This document shows positions 2,448 through 64,000 of a stretch of DNA of 64,000 bases, one piece after another. The notes under the pieces were generated by a model. It saw only the letters and a list, made by a program, of their open reading frames with translations. It did not search any database and was not told the DNA's origin. The DNA lies in contig NW_005434668.1 in NCBI RefSeq assembly GCF_000315625.1, positions 66,852 to 130,851 of the forward strand. Direction: 5' to 3'. The translations under genes and the position numbers were made by a program. Numbering within the stretch: the first letter of the stretch is position 1; every line of letters starts with the position of its first letter. The DNA comes from Guillardia theta CCMP2712 (lineage: Eukaryota > Protista > Cryptophyta).

Positions 2448-3461
2448 ATGGACAGGCGACGTCTGTTGGCTCTTGATCTTCCGCTTGTTTTCTTGTTCTT
2501 GCTTCTGCTCGTTCCTGCATCTCACGCGAAGGATCCAATCAAGAGAAATCCACATCGAAGATGTAACTTTGTTCCCCCTCCCTCTCCTCCTCCTCCTCCT
2601 CCTCCACCACCACCACCACCACCACCACCTCCTCCTCCTCCTCCTCCTNNNNNNNNNNNNNNNNNNNNNNNNNNNNNNNNNNNNNNNNNNNNNNNNNNNN
2701 NNNNNNNNNNNNNNNNNNNNNNNNNNNNNNNNNNNNNNNNNNNNNNNNCAACAACACCTCCTTCCCCTCCCCCTCCATCAAATTCAGTACCACCCCCTCC
2801 ATCAAATTCAGCACCACCCCCTCCATCAAATTCAGCATCCCCACCTTCTCCATCTGCGCAAGTGCCCTCTTCCACCACAAACCCTGTAACCCCAAAAACC
2901 TGCGATCCTGGTTGGATGTTGACTCAGGGTACGTGCACACCATGTTCGTACCAACCCAAAGACTCCGTCTGGCTCAGCGTGGGAGTCTGCAACTGGGTGT
3001 GCAAGGAAGGCTTCAAGGAAGATGGACAGTTCTGCGTGCAGGGTAGCCAGGCAGAGAAGGGGGTCGTCTTGCTGACTCTCGGGCTGAACACCACGAGAGC
3101 TTCTTTCGAGGTTCAGAAAGATCGCTACGTGAATGCTCTGGCTCTTCTTCTTCGAGTGTCGCCAACGCTGGTCCAAGTTACAAGTGGAAGGCGGCAAGAA
3201 CAGGCCTTGACTGTTTCGTTTCGTGTGGAAACATTCCAAGACCTGACGAAAGGCCTGCAGCTGGACTTGATCAAGGTCAACGAAGCCTTCATCCAACATG
3301 GAGTCCCAACAGCTGTCCAGCTGCAGTTCGAGTATCAGAAACAAGCTCGTCAAGCGGGGTCTCAGGTGACTAGCAGTCCAGCAGCTGCTATTGAATCCAA
3401 TGCTGTGTTTCTGTGTGCTACGGTTGCAGCAGCGGTGGCGACGTTGTGTGCGGTCTACTAG
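2448..3461 (+). CDS. Secreted/GPI-like proline-rich (extensin-like) surface protein with Cys-rich module
   Basis: Signal peptide (LVFLFLLLLVPASHA), poly-Pro/SPPP tract interrupted by an N gap, Cys-rich segment (CDPGW..CTPC..CNWVCKEGF..C), hydrophobic C-terminal tail. Confidence 0.7.
   Translation: MDRRRLLALDLPLVFLFLLLLVPASHAKDPIKRNPHRRCNFVPPPSPPPPPPPPPPPPPPPPPPPPPXXXXXXXXXXXXXXXXXXXXXXXXXXXXXXXXXXTTPPSPPPPSNSVPPPPSNSAPPPPSNSASPPSPSAQVPSSTTNPVTPKTCDPGWMLTQGTCTPCSYQPKDSVWLSVGVCNWVCKEGFKEDGQFCVQGSQAEKGVVLLTLGLNTTRASFEVQKDRYVNALALLLRVSPTLVQVTSGRRQEQALTVSFRVETFQDLTKGLQLDLIKVNEAFIQHGVPTAVQLQFEYQKQARQAGSQVTSSPAAAIESNAVFLCATVAAAVATLCAVY
2649..2748. other. Assembly gap (100 N) inside poly-Pro coding repeat
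   Basis: Run of n characters. Confidence 0.99.
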
Positions 3462-3529
3462 CTTTAACACAGATGTTCTGTGCTGTCTACTAGCTTTAAC
3501 ACAGATGTTCTGTGCTGTCTACTAGCTTT
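3453..3529 (+). repeat. 32-bp tandem repeat x~2.4 spanning the stop codon
   Basis: Unit gtctactagctttaacacagatgttctgtgct, with an internal inverted repeat cacaga-tgt-tctgtg. Confidence 0.85.
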
Positions 3530-4091
3530 CAAGCCCTAGACCATGATTGCCGTTATTAAAGTGTTGTTTGTGAAGGAGTAACACGAGGGGCAGGGGCAGG
3601 TTTCTCTTCGTCTGAATATCGAGGGGAGGAGTCAAGGCGGGCTCACCTCAGAACCGTTTGTGCCAGACTCAGTTTGATCAAGTCTGCCTCAGTTTAGATT
3701 GATCTCACCAGGCCCGCACGGGACCTGTCCCTACAGTTTCAAGTCGAGATTCTTCCATGCTCATTGCTCCATGCTCCGTCTCCTCTCCTCTCCTCTCCTC
3801 TCCTTTCTTCTCCTCTCCTCTCCTCTCGAGTCCTCCCGCCGGGCTTGCCCTCTCCTACCCTCTCCTCCTCTTTCCTGACGGAGGCTCCTTTCCCCTCCCT
3901 ACCCTTCCCCTCTCTAGCCCTCCTCCCTCCCCTTTTCTTCTCTCCCATCCCACTGCTGCTCTCGCCTACCATTTTCTACTTCCCTGCCTCCCTCGCAGTC
4001 GCTCACTCTCCCTCCCCCTCACATGCTGGCATGCTTCTACACCATATTCTTCCTCGCTGCCCATGACCTGACCATGTCCGTTGCAGTCCAC

Positions 4092-4405
4092 ATGTCACAC
4101 CCGAACTTCGTCAAGTTGGTGAAGCTCCTCCTCCTCCTCCTCCTCGGCATCTTCCTGCTGTGCTCGAGGCAAGTAGCAGGACAAGAGTCAACCATCCAAG
4201 TCAAGGAAGTTCAACCACCTGCGGAGCCAGCGGTCCGACGTCTCTTCCTCTGCGCTAGAGCTGACCTGATTGGGTCCAGGGATGCAGCCCTGAAGATTGG
4301 GAGGATCAGCTCAAGATTATGATGCTGAGCGATCGAGCCCGTCGGGGTTGGACGGTTGAGGAGGAGGAGGAGGAGAAGACTGAGGTACTCGAAGTCGCGC
4401 AGTGA
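4092..4405 (+). CDS. Small putative secreted protein (~88 aa, 2 exons)
   Basis: MSHPNFVKLVKLLLLLLLGIFLLCSRQVAG signal. A 47-nt GT-AG intron (4233-4279) gives the in-frame acidic tail GCSPEDWEDQLK...EVAQ*. Confidence 0.5.
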
Positions 4406-4610
4406 GATGAGAGGTATATTGTGGTACATGGATCAGAGTTAGCTGTTCCGATGATGATGATGACGATGACGATGACGAGGATTAATGTTGATGATGTTGA
4501 TAAAGATGATGATAATGTTTACGATAATGAAATCAAAGCAATGTGAAATTGACACAACACAAGCGAGTAGAGCGGTGGCGACGAGCAGCGAGATGAATTC
4601 TATACAAGCT

Positions 4611-7193
4611 TTATCTTTTTACAAGTGTAGCCATCTTAGCAACAAGTCGCAGTTCAAACTCATTTACAGCTGTTGTCCTAACTTTCAAAACCTGCAACAA
4701 CGTCAAAACCTTGCAAAGAAATCAACAAGAGGCCAAACCTCCAGCTCCTGGAACCCACCGCTCTTCTCGCACTCACTGAAGTTCTGCGAGCAGAGCAATC
4801 AAAGATCTCGAATATCACGAATGATGTCGGACCGCTTGCAGAGCCAGACGAGAAGCTTCAGAGCAGTCTTGCTGTGACGTACTTACTTGCGCAGCTACAC
4901 ACACAGTCAGTGAAAGCTGCTTGCTGTACATGAGGAAGTGATGAAAAGAGATATTGATGCCACTGTGATAATCATGTTATGTTTTCTTGCCTGTATGCGA
5001 CACGTCGATGATGGAGATGCGACGGCAAAGTTTCCCGACTGAAGGCAGAGTCTCATCCCAGCTCTGCTCCTCTCCTCGCTGTCTCACCGCAGATAAGAAG
5101 GCCCAGCTTGTTGAACATGGCTGATTTCGCGTGGTGAAGGTGAAGCTCTCGCAAGCCAGGAGACTGACGAGGCGTGACAAGCAGAGACCCATGAGAGGAA
5201 AACTTACAAGGAGGAGCATATCTCGCAACGCTTCCCATGAAAGGTCCTCACAGAAGGGGAGAACGATCTTCTTCACCTGACCACCATCGTGAATTCCTTC
5301 GAACCGCACGTTTCGGTGAGGGCCAAGGGCTTCGCCTCCTCACCAGCGACAGACGGTCCGGTCGCTGCATGGCATCCCTGAAGGAGGAGTGCAAACCCGT
5401 CGCTCCTCCCAGATCCAAACATCTCAACCCGGTGCAAGCGTCGAAGATCAGCGCCAAGTCCTTCCCGCTGTCAGTGCCAAGATAGGAGGAGGAGCAGGAG
5501 GGAGAAGCGGAGGCGGAGGCGGAGGCGGAGAAGGGGGAACAGGGGCAGGGGCAGGGGCAGGGGCAGGGGCAGGGGCAGGGGCAGGGGCAGGAGCAGGGGC
5601 AGGGGTAGGAGCAGGGGCAGGGGCAGGAGAAGGGGCAGGGGCAGGAGGCTCACCGAGCTTGTCCAGTCCACAGAGCGCATGACAAGCGTGTGCAAGGAAG
5701 AAGCAGATGTATCTATGACGTCGAGCCTGCGCGGGCCATCCCAGTCGAAGAGAACCTCAAGGCTCCTTCCTCCAGGCCGGTTCAACGCCTTGGTTCCTTG
5801 CAGGATCCCGTACGCTGACCGAGCTCGGCCGGTGACGATCTGAGCATGCTGTCAAGAAGAGGACGAACGAGGGGAAGAATCACCTCTTCCAGCTGGAACT
5901 GCGAGAGTTCGTAGAAGCTATCATGTGTGATGAGGCAGTGCGCGAGCCGCAGGGTTTTGATCTTCTTGCAGTGAGTTGCTATCGCCATGACGACTGCGAT
6001 CGAGTCACTAGCCGTTGACTCGATCCCTCCTCTCACCTCTGTCTGTCAGTGCAGCACATCCGCAGACGTCGAAAGAGACGAGCGAGGGGCAGGAAGCAAC
6101 AAGTCCACAGATGGCCTCGTCGCTCGTGTAAGTCTCGCTGATCTCCAGGTGCTCCAGCAGCGGCAGGCTGCTCCTGACGTCTACGACAGCTACATGGTCA
6201 CAACCTGAGATCTTCAACTCTGAGAGGGGGCAGGAGCGCAGCATGATCGAGATTCCCGCCTCAGTGACCTTGGACGCCTTGGTCAGCACGAAGTGCTCCA
6301 GCAAGGCACAGTGAGAGGCGATGAGCCCCAGCCCCGCGTTGGTGATGCTTCCTCCGCACAGAAAGTCGGACCCAGTGAACCTCAGCGTCCGAATGTTGGG
6401 CATCAGGTGCATGTATCCGCAGGTGCTGTTGGAAGGGCTGCCCGTATCTGAGAGGTTGATAGAGAGGAGAGAAGGAAACAGCAGGCAAAGTTTGACAACC
6501 ATGTTGTCAACAGACCGAAAGCTCGAAGACCTTCTTTCTTCACTTGAGCTGCACTTGACCAGCTCCAACACCTCCAAGTTCCTTGCGATCTCCCCAGAAA
6601 CCTCGCAAAGAGCCCAGTCATCGAAGTCGTTGTCCTTAGCGCCTGCAACTCTGTTGCACAGATAGTCAGAGAGCCGAGGACGGAGACTGAGAAGCAGAAG
6701 CTCGAGACCACGGGAGGAACAACTACACCATAGCAATCAACGGATCTTGTTACCTGAGATGCGTGAGATGCTTGCACGTGCAGACAAGGGTGTGCAGACT
6801 TTCTCCCGTCAGGGTGTTGTCATACATGTGCTTGCCCAGCTTCTCAAGATCCAAGGAGACCAAGTTAGGGCAGAGCAAGCACATATTAATGGTTTCGAGA
6901 AACGATATCGAGGAGATTCCCAAGAGCTTCAAGCTTCGAATGTTCCTCATATCAAGTTGTGTCGTGCACTCCACTGAAAAACTCGACCATGGCGGCATGT
7001 TCACATCGCTGCATGGCGTGTACCTAGCAACCAGACACGTCTCTTCCCAGAGTTGCTTTCTATGAGAATTTACAATGTCGTGCCAAGATTTGCAGACTAA
7101 GGGAACACCCTTGGCTGGCGTCAGCCATGGCCAGTGGGGGAGGTGGCGAAATATTTCGACATGGAGGGCAACCTCCAGGGAGCTGAAATCCAT
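4611..7193 (-). CDS. F-box/LRR-repeat protein (multi-exon)
   Basis: N-terminal F-box (MDFSSLEVALHVEIFRHL...VCKSWHDIV) followed by cysteine-containing LRRs (ITNAGLGLIASHCALLEHFVL; TSDEAICGLVASCPSLVSFDVCGC; LIFDACTGLRCLDL). Confidence 0.8.
5541..5646 (+). repeat. (GGGGCA)n microsatellite in F-box gene intron
   Basis: Direct reading; G-quadruplex-capable. Confidence 0.9.
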
Positions 7194-62230: not shown

Positions 62231-62763
62231 TTCAAACGACTTCCTTAGTCCGCGCGTGAAGTTTGAACGATGATATCTCTTGTCGGCATTCATTCATGTG
62301 AGATTGAGATGTGATTATTTCAGAAGATTGGTTGGTACATCTTCACTCAAAATGTCTTTTACCCATCTCGCGAAATGTCTTTTACTACAGTTCAACAACA
62401 TTCGATCTCCGAGGTTCAAAATCCAATATGCTCTGACGTCTGACAACATTTGTTCCATCTTCAGGATCTATCCTCGTTCATCATTCATCATTCCTCTCTT
62501 CCCCTCCCCTCCTCTCCCCTCCTCTCGTCCCGCTTCTCATGGGGGGATAGCTTTGACCAGTTTACAAATACAGTTTTAATTTCCATTGTACAATACTTAT
62601 TCAAAGGCGAAGGCTTAAAGGGAGAGCGAGTGAGGGAGAGCGAGTGAGGGAGGAAGCAAGTGAGGGAGGATGCAATATGCGTCAGAAGATTGTTCTCAGA
62701 CTCCTCGCACCCTTCCTGCTCCTGCGGCATGATAAAGAGTGATTGAGTATCCCATCTGCCGCC

Positions 62764-64000
62764 ATGCCCGCAACGAAACTTGCTCGCAAGTCACTCTCGA
62801 AAGCATCGAGCTCGTTTGAGAGCGAAGAAGAGACAAGCTGCGAGGACGAGGATAGCTCCTGTGACTCTGACTTGCTCCAGTACGAGCAAGACGATAGCAG
62901 GCAGGTTGATGACACATCACTAGAAGCTGCTGAGCAGGACGATCTCTACAATGGCAAGCACGTGTGGGAGGTAGATGTGGGTGAAACTTACAACAAGCTC
63001 AAGGAGGAGGTGGAGGACACGTTCGTACGCGGGAGCTCAGGCAGACTACCTCGTCCTCATCAGGCAGACTGTGTGACGAGGCTGATCATGGAGCTGCGGA
63101 TTGATCAGAGGAGGAGCAGGGGGCGACCAGTGAACTATCTCATCCAGCACGCTACAGGAACAGGAAAGAGTCTCACCATCTCCTCCCTCTGCCTCGCGCT
63201 GCTGCGGCTCCCTGACCAGGACTCTCCCTCCTCCTCCATCGTTGGATGGCTGCGAGCTGCGAGCTCCTCCCCCTCCCTCCCCTCCTCCACCTTCCACTAT
63301 ACGTTCGTCATCATCCTTACCGACAGACTTCAGCTGGACCGTCAGCTCGGGGATACGATCGAGCTCTTCCTCCAGAGCAACGGACATGGGCTGATCCGGT
63401 GCCGGACGACGGGAGAGCTGGCAGAAGCGATCCGGGACCCTTGGCACGGGGGGCCAAGAGCGATTCTGAGCACTATGCAGAAGTTTTCAGGGCTAGCAAA
63501 GACGCAGAGCAGGACGGTGGGGGAGGGGGAGGGGGAGGGAGGAGGGGAGGACATACTGCAGGTGCTGGTGAAACGGCACAGGGTAGCGATCATAGCAGAC
63601 GAGGCACATCGCTCTCACGGGCAGAGGACGAGCCTCGCCATGCACGAGATGTTGGGGGGCCGTCGGGCTCAGAGTCCGAGCATCAACTACTTCGGTTTCT
63701 CTGCTACCCCCTCGAGGACAGCACTCAAACTGTTTGGGAGGAGACGAGCTGGAGGAGGAGGAGGAGGTGGTGGTGGTGGTGGTGGTGGTGGTGGAGGAGG
63801 AGGAGGTGGTGGTGGAGGAGGAGGTGGAGGAGGGCTGGAGTACGCACCAGCTCACTGCTACAGCATGCAGGAGGCGATAGCCGATGGGCATGTGATGAAC
63901 CCGCTTGCAGACTACATGTGCGTGAAAATCAGCTCAGGGGCTGCGGAGAGGGAGAAGAGGCAGAAGGGCGGGAGAGCGGAGGAGAGGAGAAGTTCCAAGG
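62764..64000 (+). CDS. Type I restriction enzyme R subunit (HsdR)-like SF2 ATPase/translocase, partial (open to window end)
   Basis: Frame-1 ORF with no stop from 62764 to 64000: LPRPHQ, NYLIQHATGTGKS (Walker A, 63145-63171), IILTDRLQLDRQL, ILSTMQKF, IIADEAHRSHG (63598-63609), YFGFSATP..ALKLFG, HCYSMQEAIADG. Confidence 0.85.
   Translation, partial: MPATKLARKSLSKASSSFESEEETSCEDEDSSCDSDLLQYEQDDSRQVDDTSLEAAEQDDLYNGKHVWEVDVGETYNKLKEEVEDTFVRGSSGRLPRPHQADCVTRLIMELRIDQRRSRGRPVNYLIQHATGTGKSLTISSLCLALLRLPDQDSPSSSIVGWLRAASSSPSLPSSTFHYTFVIILTDRLQLDRQLGDTIELFLQSNGHGLIRCRTTGELAEAIRDPWHGGPRAILSTMQKFSGLAKTQSRTVGEGEGEGGGEDILQVLVKRHRVAIIADEAHRSHGQRTSLAMHEMLGGRRAQSPSINYFGFSATPSRTALKLFGRRRAGGGGGGGGGGGGGGGGGGGGGGGGGGGGLEYAPAHCYSMQEAIADGHVMNPLADYMCVKISSGAAEREKRQKGGRAEERRSSK

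What the first reader, a model, noticed from the sequence alone, without database searches (positions are those of the whole stretch)
62764..64000. Eukaryotic, nuclease-less type I restriction HsdR-like motor gene (absent from the ORF track)
Seen: an intronless ORF in an intron-rich eukaryotic locus carrying, in order, PRxHQ, YLIQHxTGxGKS, TDRxxLDxQL, STxQKF, DEAHRS, FSATPxxxALxLFG and HxYSMxEAIxDG. Established: this motif series is characteristic of bacterial HsdR subunits (SWI2_SNF2/ResIII-type domain) rather than eukaryotic DEAH RNA helicases. Seen: only ~95 low-complexity, mostly acidic residues precede the motor, so the HSDR_N PD-(D/E)xK nuclease is missing, and no hsdM/hsdS lies upstream in the window. 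Host-style microsatellite insertions are tolerated in frame (28-Gly run at 63751-63834; GEGEGEG), suggesting a long-resident, selected gene rather than contamination. Inference: a domesticated restriction translocase repurposed in an alga, e.g. for antiviral/foreign-DNA defence or chromatin/organelle DNA transactions.
Basis: partly seen in the sequence, partly recalled or inferred. Interest (0 to 1): 0.9.

Follow-up and report, generated by a model that had tools for sequence, protein, structure and literature searches.

The report
Restriction-enzyme motor fused to TFIIS
This expressed, intron-containing algal nuclear gene joins the DNA-pumping motor of a bacterial type I restriction enzyme (nuclease lost) to a complete but catalytically disarmed copy of the RNA polymerase II factor TFIIS, and it belongs to an undescribed protist family that probably acts on transcribing polymerase rather than in defence.

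Summary
Window 62764-64000 is the first 412 codons of a real HsdR-type SF2 motor, with every quoted motif and the in-frame 28-Gly run present and no nuclease.

The window cuts the gene. In the genome it has 11 exons and encodes 1,125 aa. Spliced transcript contigs confirm introns 1 and 2 and use of the third donor.

Downstream of the motor lies a whole TFIIS: the N-terminal domain, the central domain, and a four-Cys zinc ribbon that lacks the acidic RSADE hairpin. The same genome has a canonical TFIIS ribbon elsewhere, and no HsdM, HsdS or HSDR_N.

The same collinear fusion occurs in chlorophytes and in environmental eukaryotes. Relatives in Amoebozoa and other eukaryotes carry Surp or WW domains instead.

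All nuclease-less forms make one clade, sister to bacterial HsdRs that sit in hsdM-hsdS-hsdR operons.

Best reading: an anciently domesticated restriction translocase whose TFIIS module replaces the methyltransferase as anchor, tethering a dsDNA pump to RNA polymerase II. The architecture is well supported; the mechanism is inferred.

Eight full-text searches found no description of this fusion.

The parts
62634..62763 (+). 5' UTR (approximate). It contains short upstream ATGs, e.g. ATGATAAAGAGTGATTGA at 62729-62746.
   Evidence: Transcript contigs of X1 and X2 begin at L009:871-873, which is window 62634-62636. The contig ends lie in a short repeat, so the true TSS may be further upstream.
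62764..64000 (+). First 412 codons of exon 1. Exon 1 runs on to G000:C6:131363 (L009:2749). The whole CDS is 11 exons, C6:129615-134859, 1,125 aa.
   Evidence: Exons in L009 coordinates: 1001-2749, 2959-3088, 3296-3881, 4078-4237, 4409-4484, 4612-4787, 5015-5307, 5600-5668, 5826-5867, 5916-5955, 6189-6245. Introns 1 and 2 and the donor at 3881/3882 are seen in transcript contigs. Exons 4-7 are supported by word shares. Exons 8-11 rest on frame, splice sites and homologues.
62764..63048 (+). Acidic, Ser-rich N-terminal tail (aa 1-95) that stands where HsdR has its PD-(D/E)xK nuclease.
   Evidence: 26 D/E and 14 S in 95 aa. No Pfam hit at E<=10. The Hanusia phi protein aligns from residue 1, so it has the same start and no upstream nuclease exon.
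63049..63063 (+). PRPHQ, the start of HsdR-type motor domain 1.
   Evidence: The ResIII match starts at aa 96.
63136..63171 (+). Motif I / Walker A (YLIQHATGTGKS).
   Evidence: The segment is conserved in the family consensus.
63520..63540 (+). GEGEGEG in-frame low-complexity insertion.
   Evidence: Hanusia has a different, shorter segment here.
63598..63615 (+). Motif II (DEAHRS).
   Evidence: DEAH is invariant in all 34 top family representatives.
63697..63738 (+). Motif III region (FSATPSRTALKLFG).
   Evidence: F, T and P are invariant in the family.
63751..63834 (+). 28-Gly run from a GGN microsatellite, tolerated in frame in a motor loop.
   Evidence: The same GGA/GGT repeat has 57 further matches across the genome. 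Hanusia has only 7 residues here.
63853..63888 (+). HCYSMQEAIADG, a conserved HsdR-type segment after motif III.
   Evidence: It is conserved in the family consensus (PFHxYS...A..G).

Best explanation
This is a single-copy cryptophyte nuclear gene; the genome is probably Guillardia theta (from memory; the tools did not name it). The 1,125-aa product has these parts in order: an acidic tail (aa 1-95); an HsdR-type two-lobe SF2 dsDNA translocase with all ATPase motifs intact and no nuclease (aa about 96-640); a helical region (about 640-820); and a complete TFIIS paralogue. The TFIIS part comprises the N-terminal TND (about 860-922), central domain II (about 960-1057) and a four-Cys zinc ribbon (about 1082-1121) in which the acidic RSADE hairpin that stimulates RNA cleavage is replaced.

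Shown here: the gene structure, splicing and expression, the domain order, the losses (nuclease, HsdM, HsdS, hairpin), family membership, and descent from genuine type I R-M HsdR.

Inferred: in a type I enzyme the motor stays bound to the DNA-bound methyltransferase and reels DNA in. Here the TFIIS module would replace the methyltransferase as anchor. Domains II-III would dock on the Pol II jaw, funnel and secondary channel without triggering cleavage. The TND would bind elongation-factor motifs. The motor would pump nearby duplex DNA to help an arrested or obstructed Pol II move forward, or to dislodge it. That would make it a eukaryotic counterpart of polymerase-tethered ATPases such as Mfd, RapA, HelD and CSB/Rad26.

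My confidence in the architecture is about 0.9, and in the Pol II-tethered translocase mechanism about 0.5.
For: Motor: PF18766 E 1e-17, ResIII, T1R_D3-like PF22679 E 5e-8. The family profile hits EcoR124I HsdR residues 230-730 at E 3e-27. DEAH and the motif VI Q and R residues are invariant in 34 representatives.

One gene: contigs of two transcriptome-like runs join 2748/9 to 2958/9 and 3086 to 3294. They stop matching at 3882 with 754 and 917 further letters. All 10 introns have GT-AG or GC-AG ends and give one open frame. Seven RNA-like runs from 5 studies hold 0.46-0.49 of the words of L009:4078-5307, against 0.49 predicted for exons only and 0.96 in a DNA run.

TFIIS: PF07500 E 3e-16. 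Med26/TND hits fall on consecutive exons (E 0.0015 and 0.073), and a family HMM scores 8e-13. The profile hits human TCEA1 residues 21-299 of 301 at E 9e-18, and also Bye1 and PHF3. The ribbon alignment shows four Cys and no RSADE in all 9 fusion proteins. A canonical QTRSADEPMTTF ribbon exists elsewhere in the genome.

Same fusion elsewhere: one collinear HSP to P0007, model 83-1117 against 52-954, E 3e-66. Fusions occur in Chlamydomonas incerta, Pleodorina and Edaphochlamys, and an Atlas cluster holds 53 eukaryotic members.

Domain association: accessory domains in the nuclease-less clade are TFIIS, Surp and WW.

Origin: the nuclease-less forms make one clade (support 99 and 97), sister to HsdRs that sit in hsdM-hsdS-hsdR operons.
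Against: No experiment or interaction test bears on Pol II binding or on translocation; these are inferences from homology. The exon 3 to exon 4 junction was not read directly, because the (CTG)n repeat in intron 3 blocked read laying. Exons 8-11 have no RNA support of their own. Expression is low: a raw RNA-seq run gave about zero depth over the motor with 6% of the run read. The ribbon is too divergent to reach Pfam's Zn_ribbon_TFIIS model in the homologues, so insertion into the Pol II pore is uncertain. The trees are quick-search or FastTree, with long branches and compositional heterogeneity.
Confidence: 0.6

Rival explanations
1. One reading: a domesticated restriction translocase that works in antiviral or foreign-DNA defence, or on organelle or nucleomorph DNA.
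For: It descends from a type I R-M subunit. Relatives of about 30% identity sit on phage or prophage contigs. Cryptophytes do have extra genomes to service.
Against: It has no nuclease and no M or S partners. It is single-copy. It is fused to a complete TFIIS, and relatives carry Surp or WW domains. The N-terminus is acidic and hydrophilic with no signal peptide. No member with a TFIIS part was found on viral contigs. Motifs are conserved across distant eukaryotes, unlike typical fast-evolving defence genes.
Confidence: 0.1
2. Tethered to Pol II as above, but the motor acts on RNA-containing substrates such as R-loops or nascent RNA, or remodels the splicing or processing machinery, rather than pumping duplex DNA.
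For: Surp and WW fusions in sister sub-clades are RNA-processing or CTD-linked modules. The DEAD-box Pfam model also matches weakly, at 27.7 bits.
Against: The best matches are to HsdR-type dsDNA translocase domains (PF18766, PF22679, EcoR124I). No HA2, OB or other RNA-helicase accessory domains were found.
Confidence: 0.12
3. Two neighbouring genes (a motor-only gene ending at the TGA at L009:3883-3885, and a separate TFIIS paralogue) that I have wrongly joined.
For: The exon 3 to exon 4 junction was not read directly. Motor-only family members exist, such as Entamoeba and Pelomyxa. A search for junction-spanning predicted proteins found nothing.
Against: Two independent transcript contigs leave the genome exactly at the GT donor, which overlaps the TGA, and continue for 754 and 917 letters. 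The 917 figure equals the modelled remaining CDS plus 5 nt. The junction is in frame. The spliced product aligns end to end with fusion proteins of other species, and the fusion recurs in named genomes.
Confidence: 0.05
4. Bacterial contamination, misassembly or a decaying pseudogene.
For: The motor is of bacterial type. The ORF reads into low-complexity sequence after exon 1.
Against: It lies on a 1.22 Mb contig and has ten spliceosomal introns that are removed in transcripts. There is a 64%-identical orthologue in the Hanusia phi transcriptome. ATPase motifs are intact. Host-type microsatellites sit in frame.
Confidence: 0.02

Closest known systems
HsdR, the restriction/translocase subunit of type I R-M enzymes (e.g. 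EcoR124I, PDB 2w00)
   Same: Both RecA-like motor lobes match (PF18766 and PF22679; profile match to EcoR124I residues 230-730, E 3e-27). The VVDFxN..I..AF segment that opens the C-terminal region is conserved. The family is sister to HsdRs encoded in hsdM-hsdS-hsdR operons.
   Different: No PD-(D/E)xK nuclease, and no HsdM or HsdS in the genome. The TIGR00348 score is 41.6 against a cut-off of 284.55. It is a spliced eukaryotic gene, and a TFIIS module is fused at the C-terminus.
TFIIS / TCEA1, the Pol II transcript-cleavage factor
   Same: All three domains are present in the canonical order. The family profile covers human TCEA1 residues 21-299 of 301 (E 9e-18). PF07500 and PF08711 are detected on this gene's own exons.
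   Different: The acidic RSADE hairpin is absent in every fusion protein examined, and the ribbon falls below Pfam's model. The module is the C-terminal quarter of a 1,125-aa ATPase. A canonical TFIIS ribbon is encoded elsewhere in the genome.
Hairpin-less TFIIS-like Pol II binders: Bye1 (PDB 4bxx) and PHF3
   Same: These carry a TFIIS domain II-like module that occupies the TFIIS site on Pol II without stimulating cleavage (established knowledge, recalled). Both are hit by the family profile at E about 4e-4.
   Different: They carry PHD and SPOC reader domains, not an ATPase, and they lack the TND plus ribbon combination seen here.
Polymerase-tethered ATPases: bacterial Mfd, RapA and HelD; eukaryotic CSB/Rad26
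   Same: Functional analogy only, from recalled knowledge: an NTP-driven motor held on RNA polymerase to push, recycle or evict it. HelD combines a helicase-like ATPase with an arm in the secondary channel, the channel that TFIIS enters in Pol II.
   Different: No detectable homology. CSB, Rad26 and RapA are true SNF2-family proteins (PF00176), Mfd is RecG-like and HelD is SF1. None derives from HsdR or uses a TFIIS module.
Unnamed eukaryotic cluster of motor-TFIIS fusions (e.g. Chlamydomonas incerta HXX76_015515, Pleodorina starrii PLESTB_001101100, Edaphochlamys debaryana HYH03_001241)
   Same: Same domain order, collinear alignment and same clade.
   Different: The chlorophycean proteins are 1,750-1,930 aa with long insertions. 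The present protein has its own microsatellite insertions. None has been characterised, and the databases call them hypothetical or 'TFIIS N-terminal domain-containing'.

Membership tests
Type I R-M HsdR (TIGR00348 / classical R subunit) | N-terminal PD-(D/E)xK nuclease domain (HSDR_N, PF04313) | tested here: not met
   Only 95 acidic residues precede the motor, with no Pfam hit at E<=10. PF04313 is absent from the whole genome. The profile match to EcoR124I starts at residue 230. The bacterial sister P0108 does have the domain.
Type I R-M HsdR (TIGR00348 / classical R subunit) | Two-lobe SF2 motor (PF18766 plus PF22679) with motifs I, II, III and VI | tested here: met
   PF18766 E 1e-17 and PF22679 E 5e-8. 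GTGKS, DEAH, SAT and QILSRINR are present and invariant in the family.
Type I R-M HsdR (TIGR00348 / classical R subunit) | C-terminal helical domain that contacts the methyltransferase | tested here: inconclusive
   The opening segment VVDFVN..I..SF is conserved with bacterial HsdRs. The 194-aa region folds as all-alpha (pLDDT 74). Foldseek finds nothing. VIA-align gives EcoR124I 731-858 at Z 6.0 and 3evy at Z 6.1, tied with unrelated helical bundles. No PF11867.
Type I R-M HsdR (TIGR00348 / classical R subunit) | Partner genes hsdM and hsdS | tested here: not met
   PF02384 and PF01420 give no match in the 87 Mb genome, while controls ring. Caveat: the search is exon by exon.
Type I R-M HsdR (TIGR00348 / classical R subunit) | Score above NCBIfam's curated cut-off | tested here: not met
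   41.6 bits against a cut-off of 284.55, for the in-window part.
TFIIS (TCEA) family | Domain I (TND, PF08711) and domain II (PF07500) in order | tested here: met
   PF07500 E 3.3e-16 on exon 7. PF08711 positions 11-32 on exon 5 and 36-51 on exon 6. A family HMM scores 8e-13 at aa 860-922.
TFIIS (TCEA) family | Domain III four-Cys zinc ribbon | tested here: inconclusive
   CxxC...CxxC is present and aligns with the other fusions and with the genome's canonical ribbon. The profile alignment to TCEA1 runs to residue 299 of 301. However, no fusion protein reaches PF01096.
TFIIS (TCEA) family | Acidic hairpin (RSADE) needed to stimulate transcript cleavage | tested here: not met
   It is replaced by IGIKGGWISSEKE here and by unrelated residues in the 8 other fusion proteins. 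The canonical QTRSADEP is present at C9:192171-192257.
Eukaryotic nuclease-less HsdR-like clade (unnamed) | Falls within the clade and is collinear with fusion members | tested here: met
   Clade support 99 (51 rows) and 97 (97 rows), with Hanusia as nearest. One HSP of 1,035 residues to P0007.
True SWI2/SNF2 remodellers (PF00176) or eukaryotic DEAH RNA helicases | SNF2-related N domain, or HA2/OB accessory domains | tested here: not met
   No PF00176, HA2 or OB hit on this gene. Only a marginal DEAD hit at 27.7 bits against a cut-off of 26.

The most novel reading that the evidence does not exclude
The motor-TFIIS fusion may be a previously unrecognised class of Pol II elongation or rescue factor. 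A restriction-enzyme DNA pump would plug into the polymerase through a cleavage-dead TFIIS and use ATP to drive arrested or blocked Pol II forward, or strip it off. This would be the eukaryotic analogue of bacterial Mfd or HelD. Sister forms would reach the same target through WW (CTD) or Surp adaptors.
Probability: 0.4. Interest if true: 0.85.

Novelty: new variant of a known kind. Interest (0 to 1): 0.7.

Why it matters
Type I restriction motors are among the fastest and most processive dsDNA pumps known, and they have been regarded as prokaryotic defence parts. This finding shows one that was captured once by eukaryotes, stripped of its nuclease and partners, and repeatedly wired to modules that recognise transcribing Pol II: TFIIS, WW and Surp.

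If the inferred mechanism holds, it adds a new kind of ATP-driven factor at the Pol II secondary channel. It would also be a clear example of a defence enzyme recycled into the core transcription machinery.

The idea is directly testable, because genetically tractable organisms carry family members. These include relatives of Chlamydomonas for the TFIIS form and dictyostelids for the Surp and motor-only forms. It also corrects the annotation of a gene that automated pipelines call 'hypothetical', 'helicase' or 'type I restriction endonuclease subunit R'.

Tried and rejected
The exon 3 to exon 4 joint is therefore inferred, not read.
2. The only raw RNA-seq run (X15) gave about zero depth over the gene with 6% of the run read. 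This shows low expression at most, not absence.
3. A search for predicted proteins spanning the junction found nothing.
4. phmmer of exon 1 against the PDB was swamped by Gly-linker artefacts. The family profile worked instead.
5. Foldseek on the exon 3 region gave no match. The VIA-align match to HsdR helical domains is not above background.
6. Eight full-text literature searches and one paper read found no description of an HsdR-TFIIS fusion or of eukaryotic HsdR homologues. One earlier query failed on syntax. Subscription journals are not covered.
7. Giant-virus origin: viral contigs hold only motor-only relatives at about 30% identity, with no TFIIS part.
8. The first large tree timed out in MAFFT. 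It was redone on motor-trimmed rows.
9. Two rows I had pre-labelled bacterial by rank (P0241, P0304) fell inside the nuclease-less clade. The gene contexts of P0241 and its clade-mate P0231 show eukaryotic WW-domain forms, and P0304 was not looked up. The mislabel was mine.
10. Complex prediction was not used, because Pol II subunits exceed its size limit.

Full report
**Observation**

Window 62764-64000 (+) starts at an ATG and stays open for 412 codons to the window edge. Pfam gives SWI2_SNF2 PF18766 (the HsdR-type motor model) at E 1.1e-17 and ResIII at 8.9e-13. NCBIfam's hsdR model matches only the motor core, at 41.6 bits against a cut-off of 284.55. The 95 residues before PRPHQ are acidic and Ser-rich (26 D/E, 14 S) and match nothing in Pfam even at E<=10.

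**The gene is longer than the window, and it is not intronless**

The window is G000:C6:66852-130851 on a 1.22 Mb contig. I fetched C6:128615-138614 as L009, so window 62764 equals L009:1001. The open frame runs on to a GTG|gtaaga donor at L009:2749. The next HsdR segments, VCNKLETGFDDPHL...QILSRINR (motif VI; T1R_D3-like PF22679, E 5e-8) and TRVVDFVN..., lie in further exons.

Logan contigs of two transcriptome-like runs join 2748/9 to 2958/9, which is intron 1 (209 nt, GT-AG). They also join 3086 to 3294 with a 3-base ambiguity, which resolves as a GC-AG intron at 3089-3295. Two further contigs match up to exactly 3882 and then carry 754 and 917 letters that do not match the following genomic sequence. 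Position 3882 is the G of a CTTGAG|gtgaat donor that overlaps the in-frame TGA. The message therefore splices on instead of terminating.

Using splice-site logic and tblastn with homologues, I assembled 11 exons. There are 9 GT-AG introns and 1 GC-AG intron of 48-292 nt, giving a single open frame of 1,125 aa that ends at L009:6245. The 917 extra letters equal the modelled remaining CDS (912 nt) plus 5 nt.

I could not lay reads across intron 3, because its (CTG)n repeat makes the tool refuse the stretch. As a quantitative check, exons 4-7 should contribute 0.49 of the 31-mers of L009:4078-5307. Seven RNA-like runs from five studies hold 0.46-0.49, while a DNA run holds 0.96. Exons 8-11 rest on frame, splice sites and homology only. 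Expression looks low: a raw RNA-seq run showed about zero depth with 6% of the run read.

**What the downstream exons encode**

Exon 7 is a TFIIS central domain (PF07500, E 3.3e-16). Exons 4-6 carry a split TFIIS N-terminal domain. Exon 5 alone hits Pfam Med26/TFIIS-N positions 11-32 (E 0.0015) and exon 6 hits positions 36-51 (E 0.073). These are consecutive parts of one domain on consecutive exons. An HMM built from the homologues' TNDs scores the spliced product at 8e-13, at aa 860-922.

Exons 9-11 give a CxxC...CxxC ribbon that aligns with those of the other fusion proteins. In all nine, the QTRSADEP hairpin is replaced by unrelated, unconserved residues. The genome encodes a canonical ribbon...CTYYQMQTRSADEPMTTF..., on contig C9, along with other TFIIS_M loci. 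The fused module is therefore an extra, cleavage-dead paralogue.

A profile of the family hits two things in the PDB: EcoR124I HsdR residues 230-730 (E 3e-27), which is the two motor lobes but essentially not the nuclease, and human TFIIS residues 21-299 of 301 (E 9e-18). It also hits Bye1 and PHF3 more weakly.

The 194-aa region between the motor and TFIIS opens with a segment conserved in bacterial HsdRs and folds as an all-alpha domain. Its resemblance to HsdR helical domains (Z 6.0-6.1) does not rise above background.

**Genome context**

PF18766 is single-copy. HSDR_N, Methylase_S and N6_Mtase give no match in the 87 Mb assembly, while the control genomes ring. The N-terminus has no hydrophobic leader.

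**Relatives**

The nearest protein is from the cryptophyte Hanusia phi, at 64% identity and aligned from residue 1. That fixes the start codon and rules out a hidden nuclease exon. Together with the assembly size, this suggests Guillardia theta, but that name comes from memory and was not tested.

Several eukaryotic proteins show the same architecture. My spliced model aligns with one of them (P0007) in a single HSP, 83-1117 against 52-954, E 3e-66. Named carriers of the fusion are Chlamydomonas incerta, Pleodorina starrii and Edaphochlamys debaryana; a Cymbomonas protein belongs to the same sub-clade. The ESM Atlas has a 53-member, all-eukaryote cluster with these domains.

Motor relatives without TFIIS occur in Entamoeba, Pelomyxa, Balamuthia, Thecamoeba, Tieghemostelium, Cavenderia and Polysphondylium, some with Surp or Arm domains. 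WW-fused forms sit on eukaryotic chromosomes with introns and eukaryotic neighbours.

An exhaustive profile search of 1.84 billion representatives found about 30 such proteins scoring above a plateau of bacterial HsdRs. Of the top 34, only 3 have HSDR_N. The accessory domains are TFIIS_M (6), TFIIS-N (5), Surp (4) and WW (2).

**Origin**

In a 51-row IQ-TREE (quick, LG+C20) the eukaryotic rows form one clade (SH-aLRT 99). It is sister to a distinct bacterial HsdR subgroup, with ordinary HsdRs as outgroup. All TFIIS fusions fall in one sub-clade (98).

A 97-row FastTree on motor-trimmed rows again gives one nuclease-less clade (97) against the bacterial group (96). Two rows that I had pre-labelled bacterial by rank fell inside the nuclease-less clade; the gene contexts of one of them (P0241) and of its clade-mate P0231 are eukaryotic.

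Two members of the bacterial sister group sit in hsdM-hsdS-hsdR operons. Viral contigs hold only motor-only relatives at about 30% identity. The simplest reading is one old capture of a genuine HsdR, followed by loss of the nuclease and then lineage-specific fusions. The trees are not 'careful' searches and carry long branches, so this is supported, not proven.

**Mechanism (inferred)**

From established knowledge of type I enzymes, HsdR is loaded by, and stays bound to, the DNA-bound M2S complex while it pumps duplex DNA. TFIIS domains II-III bind the Pol II jaw and funnel and enter the secondary channel, and the acidic hairpin is what triggers transcript cleavage. TNDs bind short motifs in elongation factors. 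Bye1 and PHF3 show that hairpin-less TFIIS-like modules can occupy Pol II without causing cleavage.

Putting these together, I propose that the TFIIS module has replaced the methyltransferase as the motor's anchor, giving a dsDNA pump tethered to Pol II. It could help an arrested or obstructed polymerase forward, or remove it, in the way that Mfd, RapA and HelD do in bacteria and CSB/Rad26 does in eukaryotes. Independent fusions of the same motor to WW and Surp modules fit a transcription-coupled role.

Nothing here tests binding or translocation. I put the architecture at about 0.9 and the mechanism at about 0.5.

**Rivals**

I considered four: a defence or organelle role, action on RNA or R-loops, two separate genes, and contamination or pseudogene. 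They are weighed in the Rival explanations section. The spliced transcripts, the in-frame junction and the recurrent fusion argue strongly against the last two.

**Novelty**

The proteins are in public databases under generic names ('hypothetical', 'helicase domain-containing', 'TFIIS N-terminal domain-containing', 'Type I restriction endonuclease subunit R'). Eight full-text searches and a check of the Aravind 2012 review (PMC3417536) found no description of a eukaryotic HsdR lineage or of its fusion with TFIIS. That review derives eukaryotic SWI2/SNF2 from R-M-associated helicases but mentions neither TFIIS nor HsdR. The library lacks most subscription journals, so prior mention elsewhere cannot be excluded. 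I class this as a new variant of a known kind.

Read laying stayed under 6,000 letters. 

Noticed in passing
L009:3089-3295 (C6:131703-131909), just beyond the window: Intron 2 uses a GC-AG splice pair (AGAAAG|gcaaac ... tatcag|GG), confirmed by two transcript contigs once the 3-base alignment ambiguity is resolved.
   Followed up: partly
L009:3115-3232, 3927-4050, 4830-4985, 5430-5560, 5990-6140: Nearly every intron carries a long microsatellite: (GTCCTC)n, about 40 x CTG, (CTCCTG)n, (CAGT)n/(CAGG)n and (GGA)n. The (GTCCTC)n bin shows summed contig depths of up to about 120,000, which is a repeat artefact and not expression.
   Followed up: no
L009:5868-5915: The modelled intron 9 is only 48 nt and its length is a multiple of 3, so retaining it would stay in frame. 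Homologue spacing favours removal, but there is no RNA evidence.
   Followed up: no
window 62367-62517 (L009:604-754): A transcribed stretch upstream of the gene shows higher depth than the gene itself: X1 contig depth about 20-26, and X15 reads with the first mate on the minus strand. It may be the 3' end of the upstream gene or a separate RNA.
   Followed up: no
window 62729-62746: A five-codon upstream ORF (ATG ATA AAG AGT GAT TGA) lies 18 nt before the start codon, with further upstream ATGs near 62670-62680. These lie within the probable 5' UTR.
   Followed up: no
G000:C9:192171-192257 (-), C1:849070-849342 (+), C2:1004170-1004448 (-): Other TFIIS-related loci exist in the same genome: a canonical ribbon with QTRSADEPMTTF on C9, and two further TFIIS_M loci, one of which (C2) lies in a 1,027-aa open frame. 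Which of them is the housekeeping TFIIS was not worked out.
   Followed up: partly
window 63737-63834 and 57 other genomic places: The GGA/GGT repeat that encodes the poly-Gly run recurs across many contigs at 73-98% identity. It is a genome-wide microsatellite class that is apparently tolerated in coding sequence.
   Followed up: no
L061 (GCA_026184515.1 CM047581.1) and L062 (GCA_005966545.1 SPLM01000044.1): A eukaryotic sub-clade of the same nuclease-less motor carries an N-terminal WW domain instead of TFIIS. Its neighbours are typical eukaryotic genes (RRM, RMI2, Ulp1-type peptidase, DENN, anoctamin). The organisms were not identified.
   Followed up: partly
P0103 and P0008 (Surp); P0101 (Arm): Amoebozoan and related environmental members of the family (e.g. 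Tieghemostelium) carry Surp modules after the motor, or Arm repeats in Balamuthia, rather than TFIIS. This suggests alternative adaptors for the same motor.
   Followed up: partly
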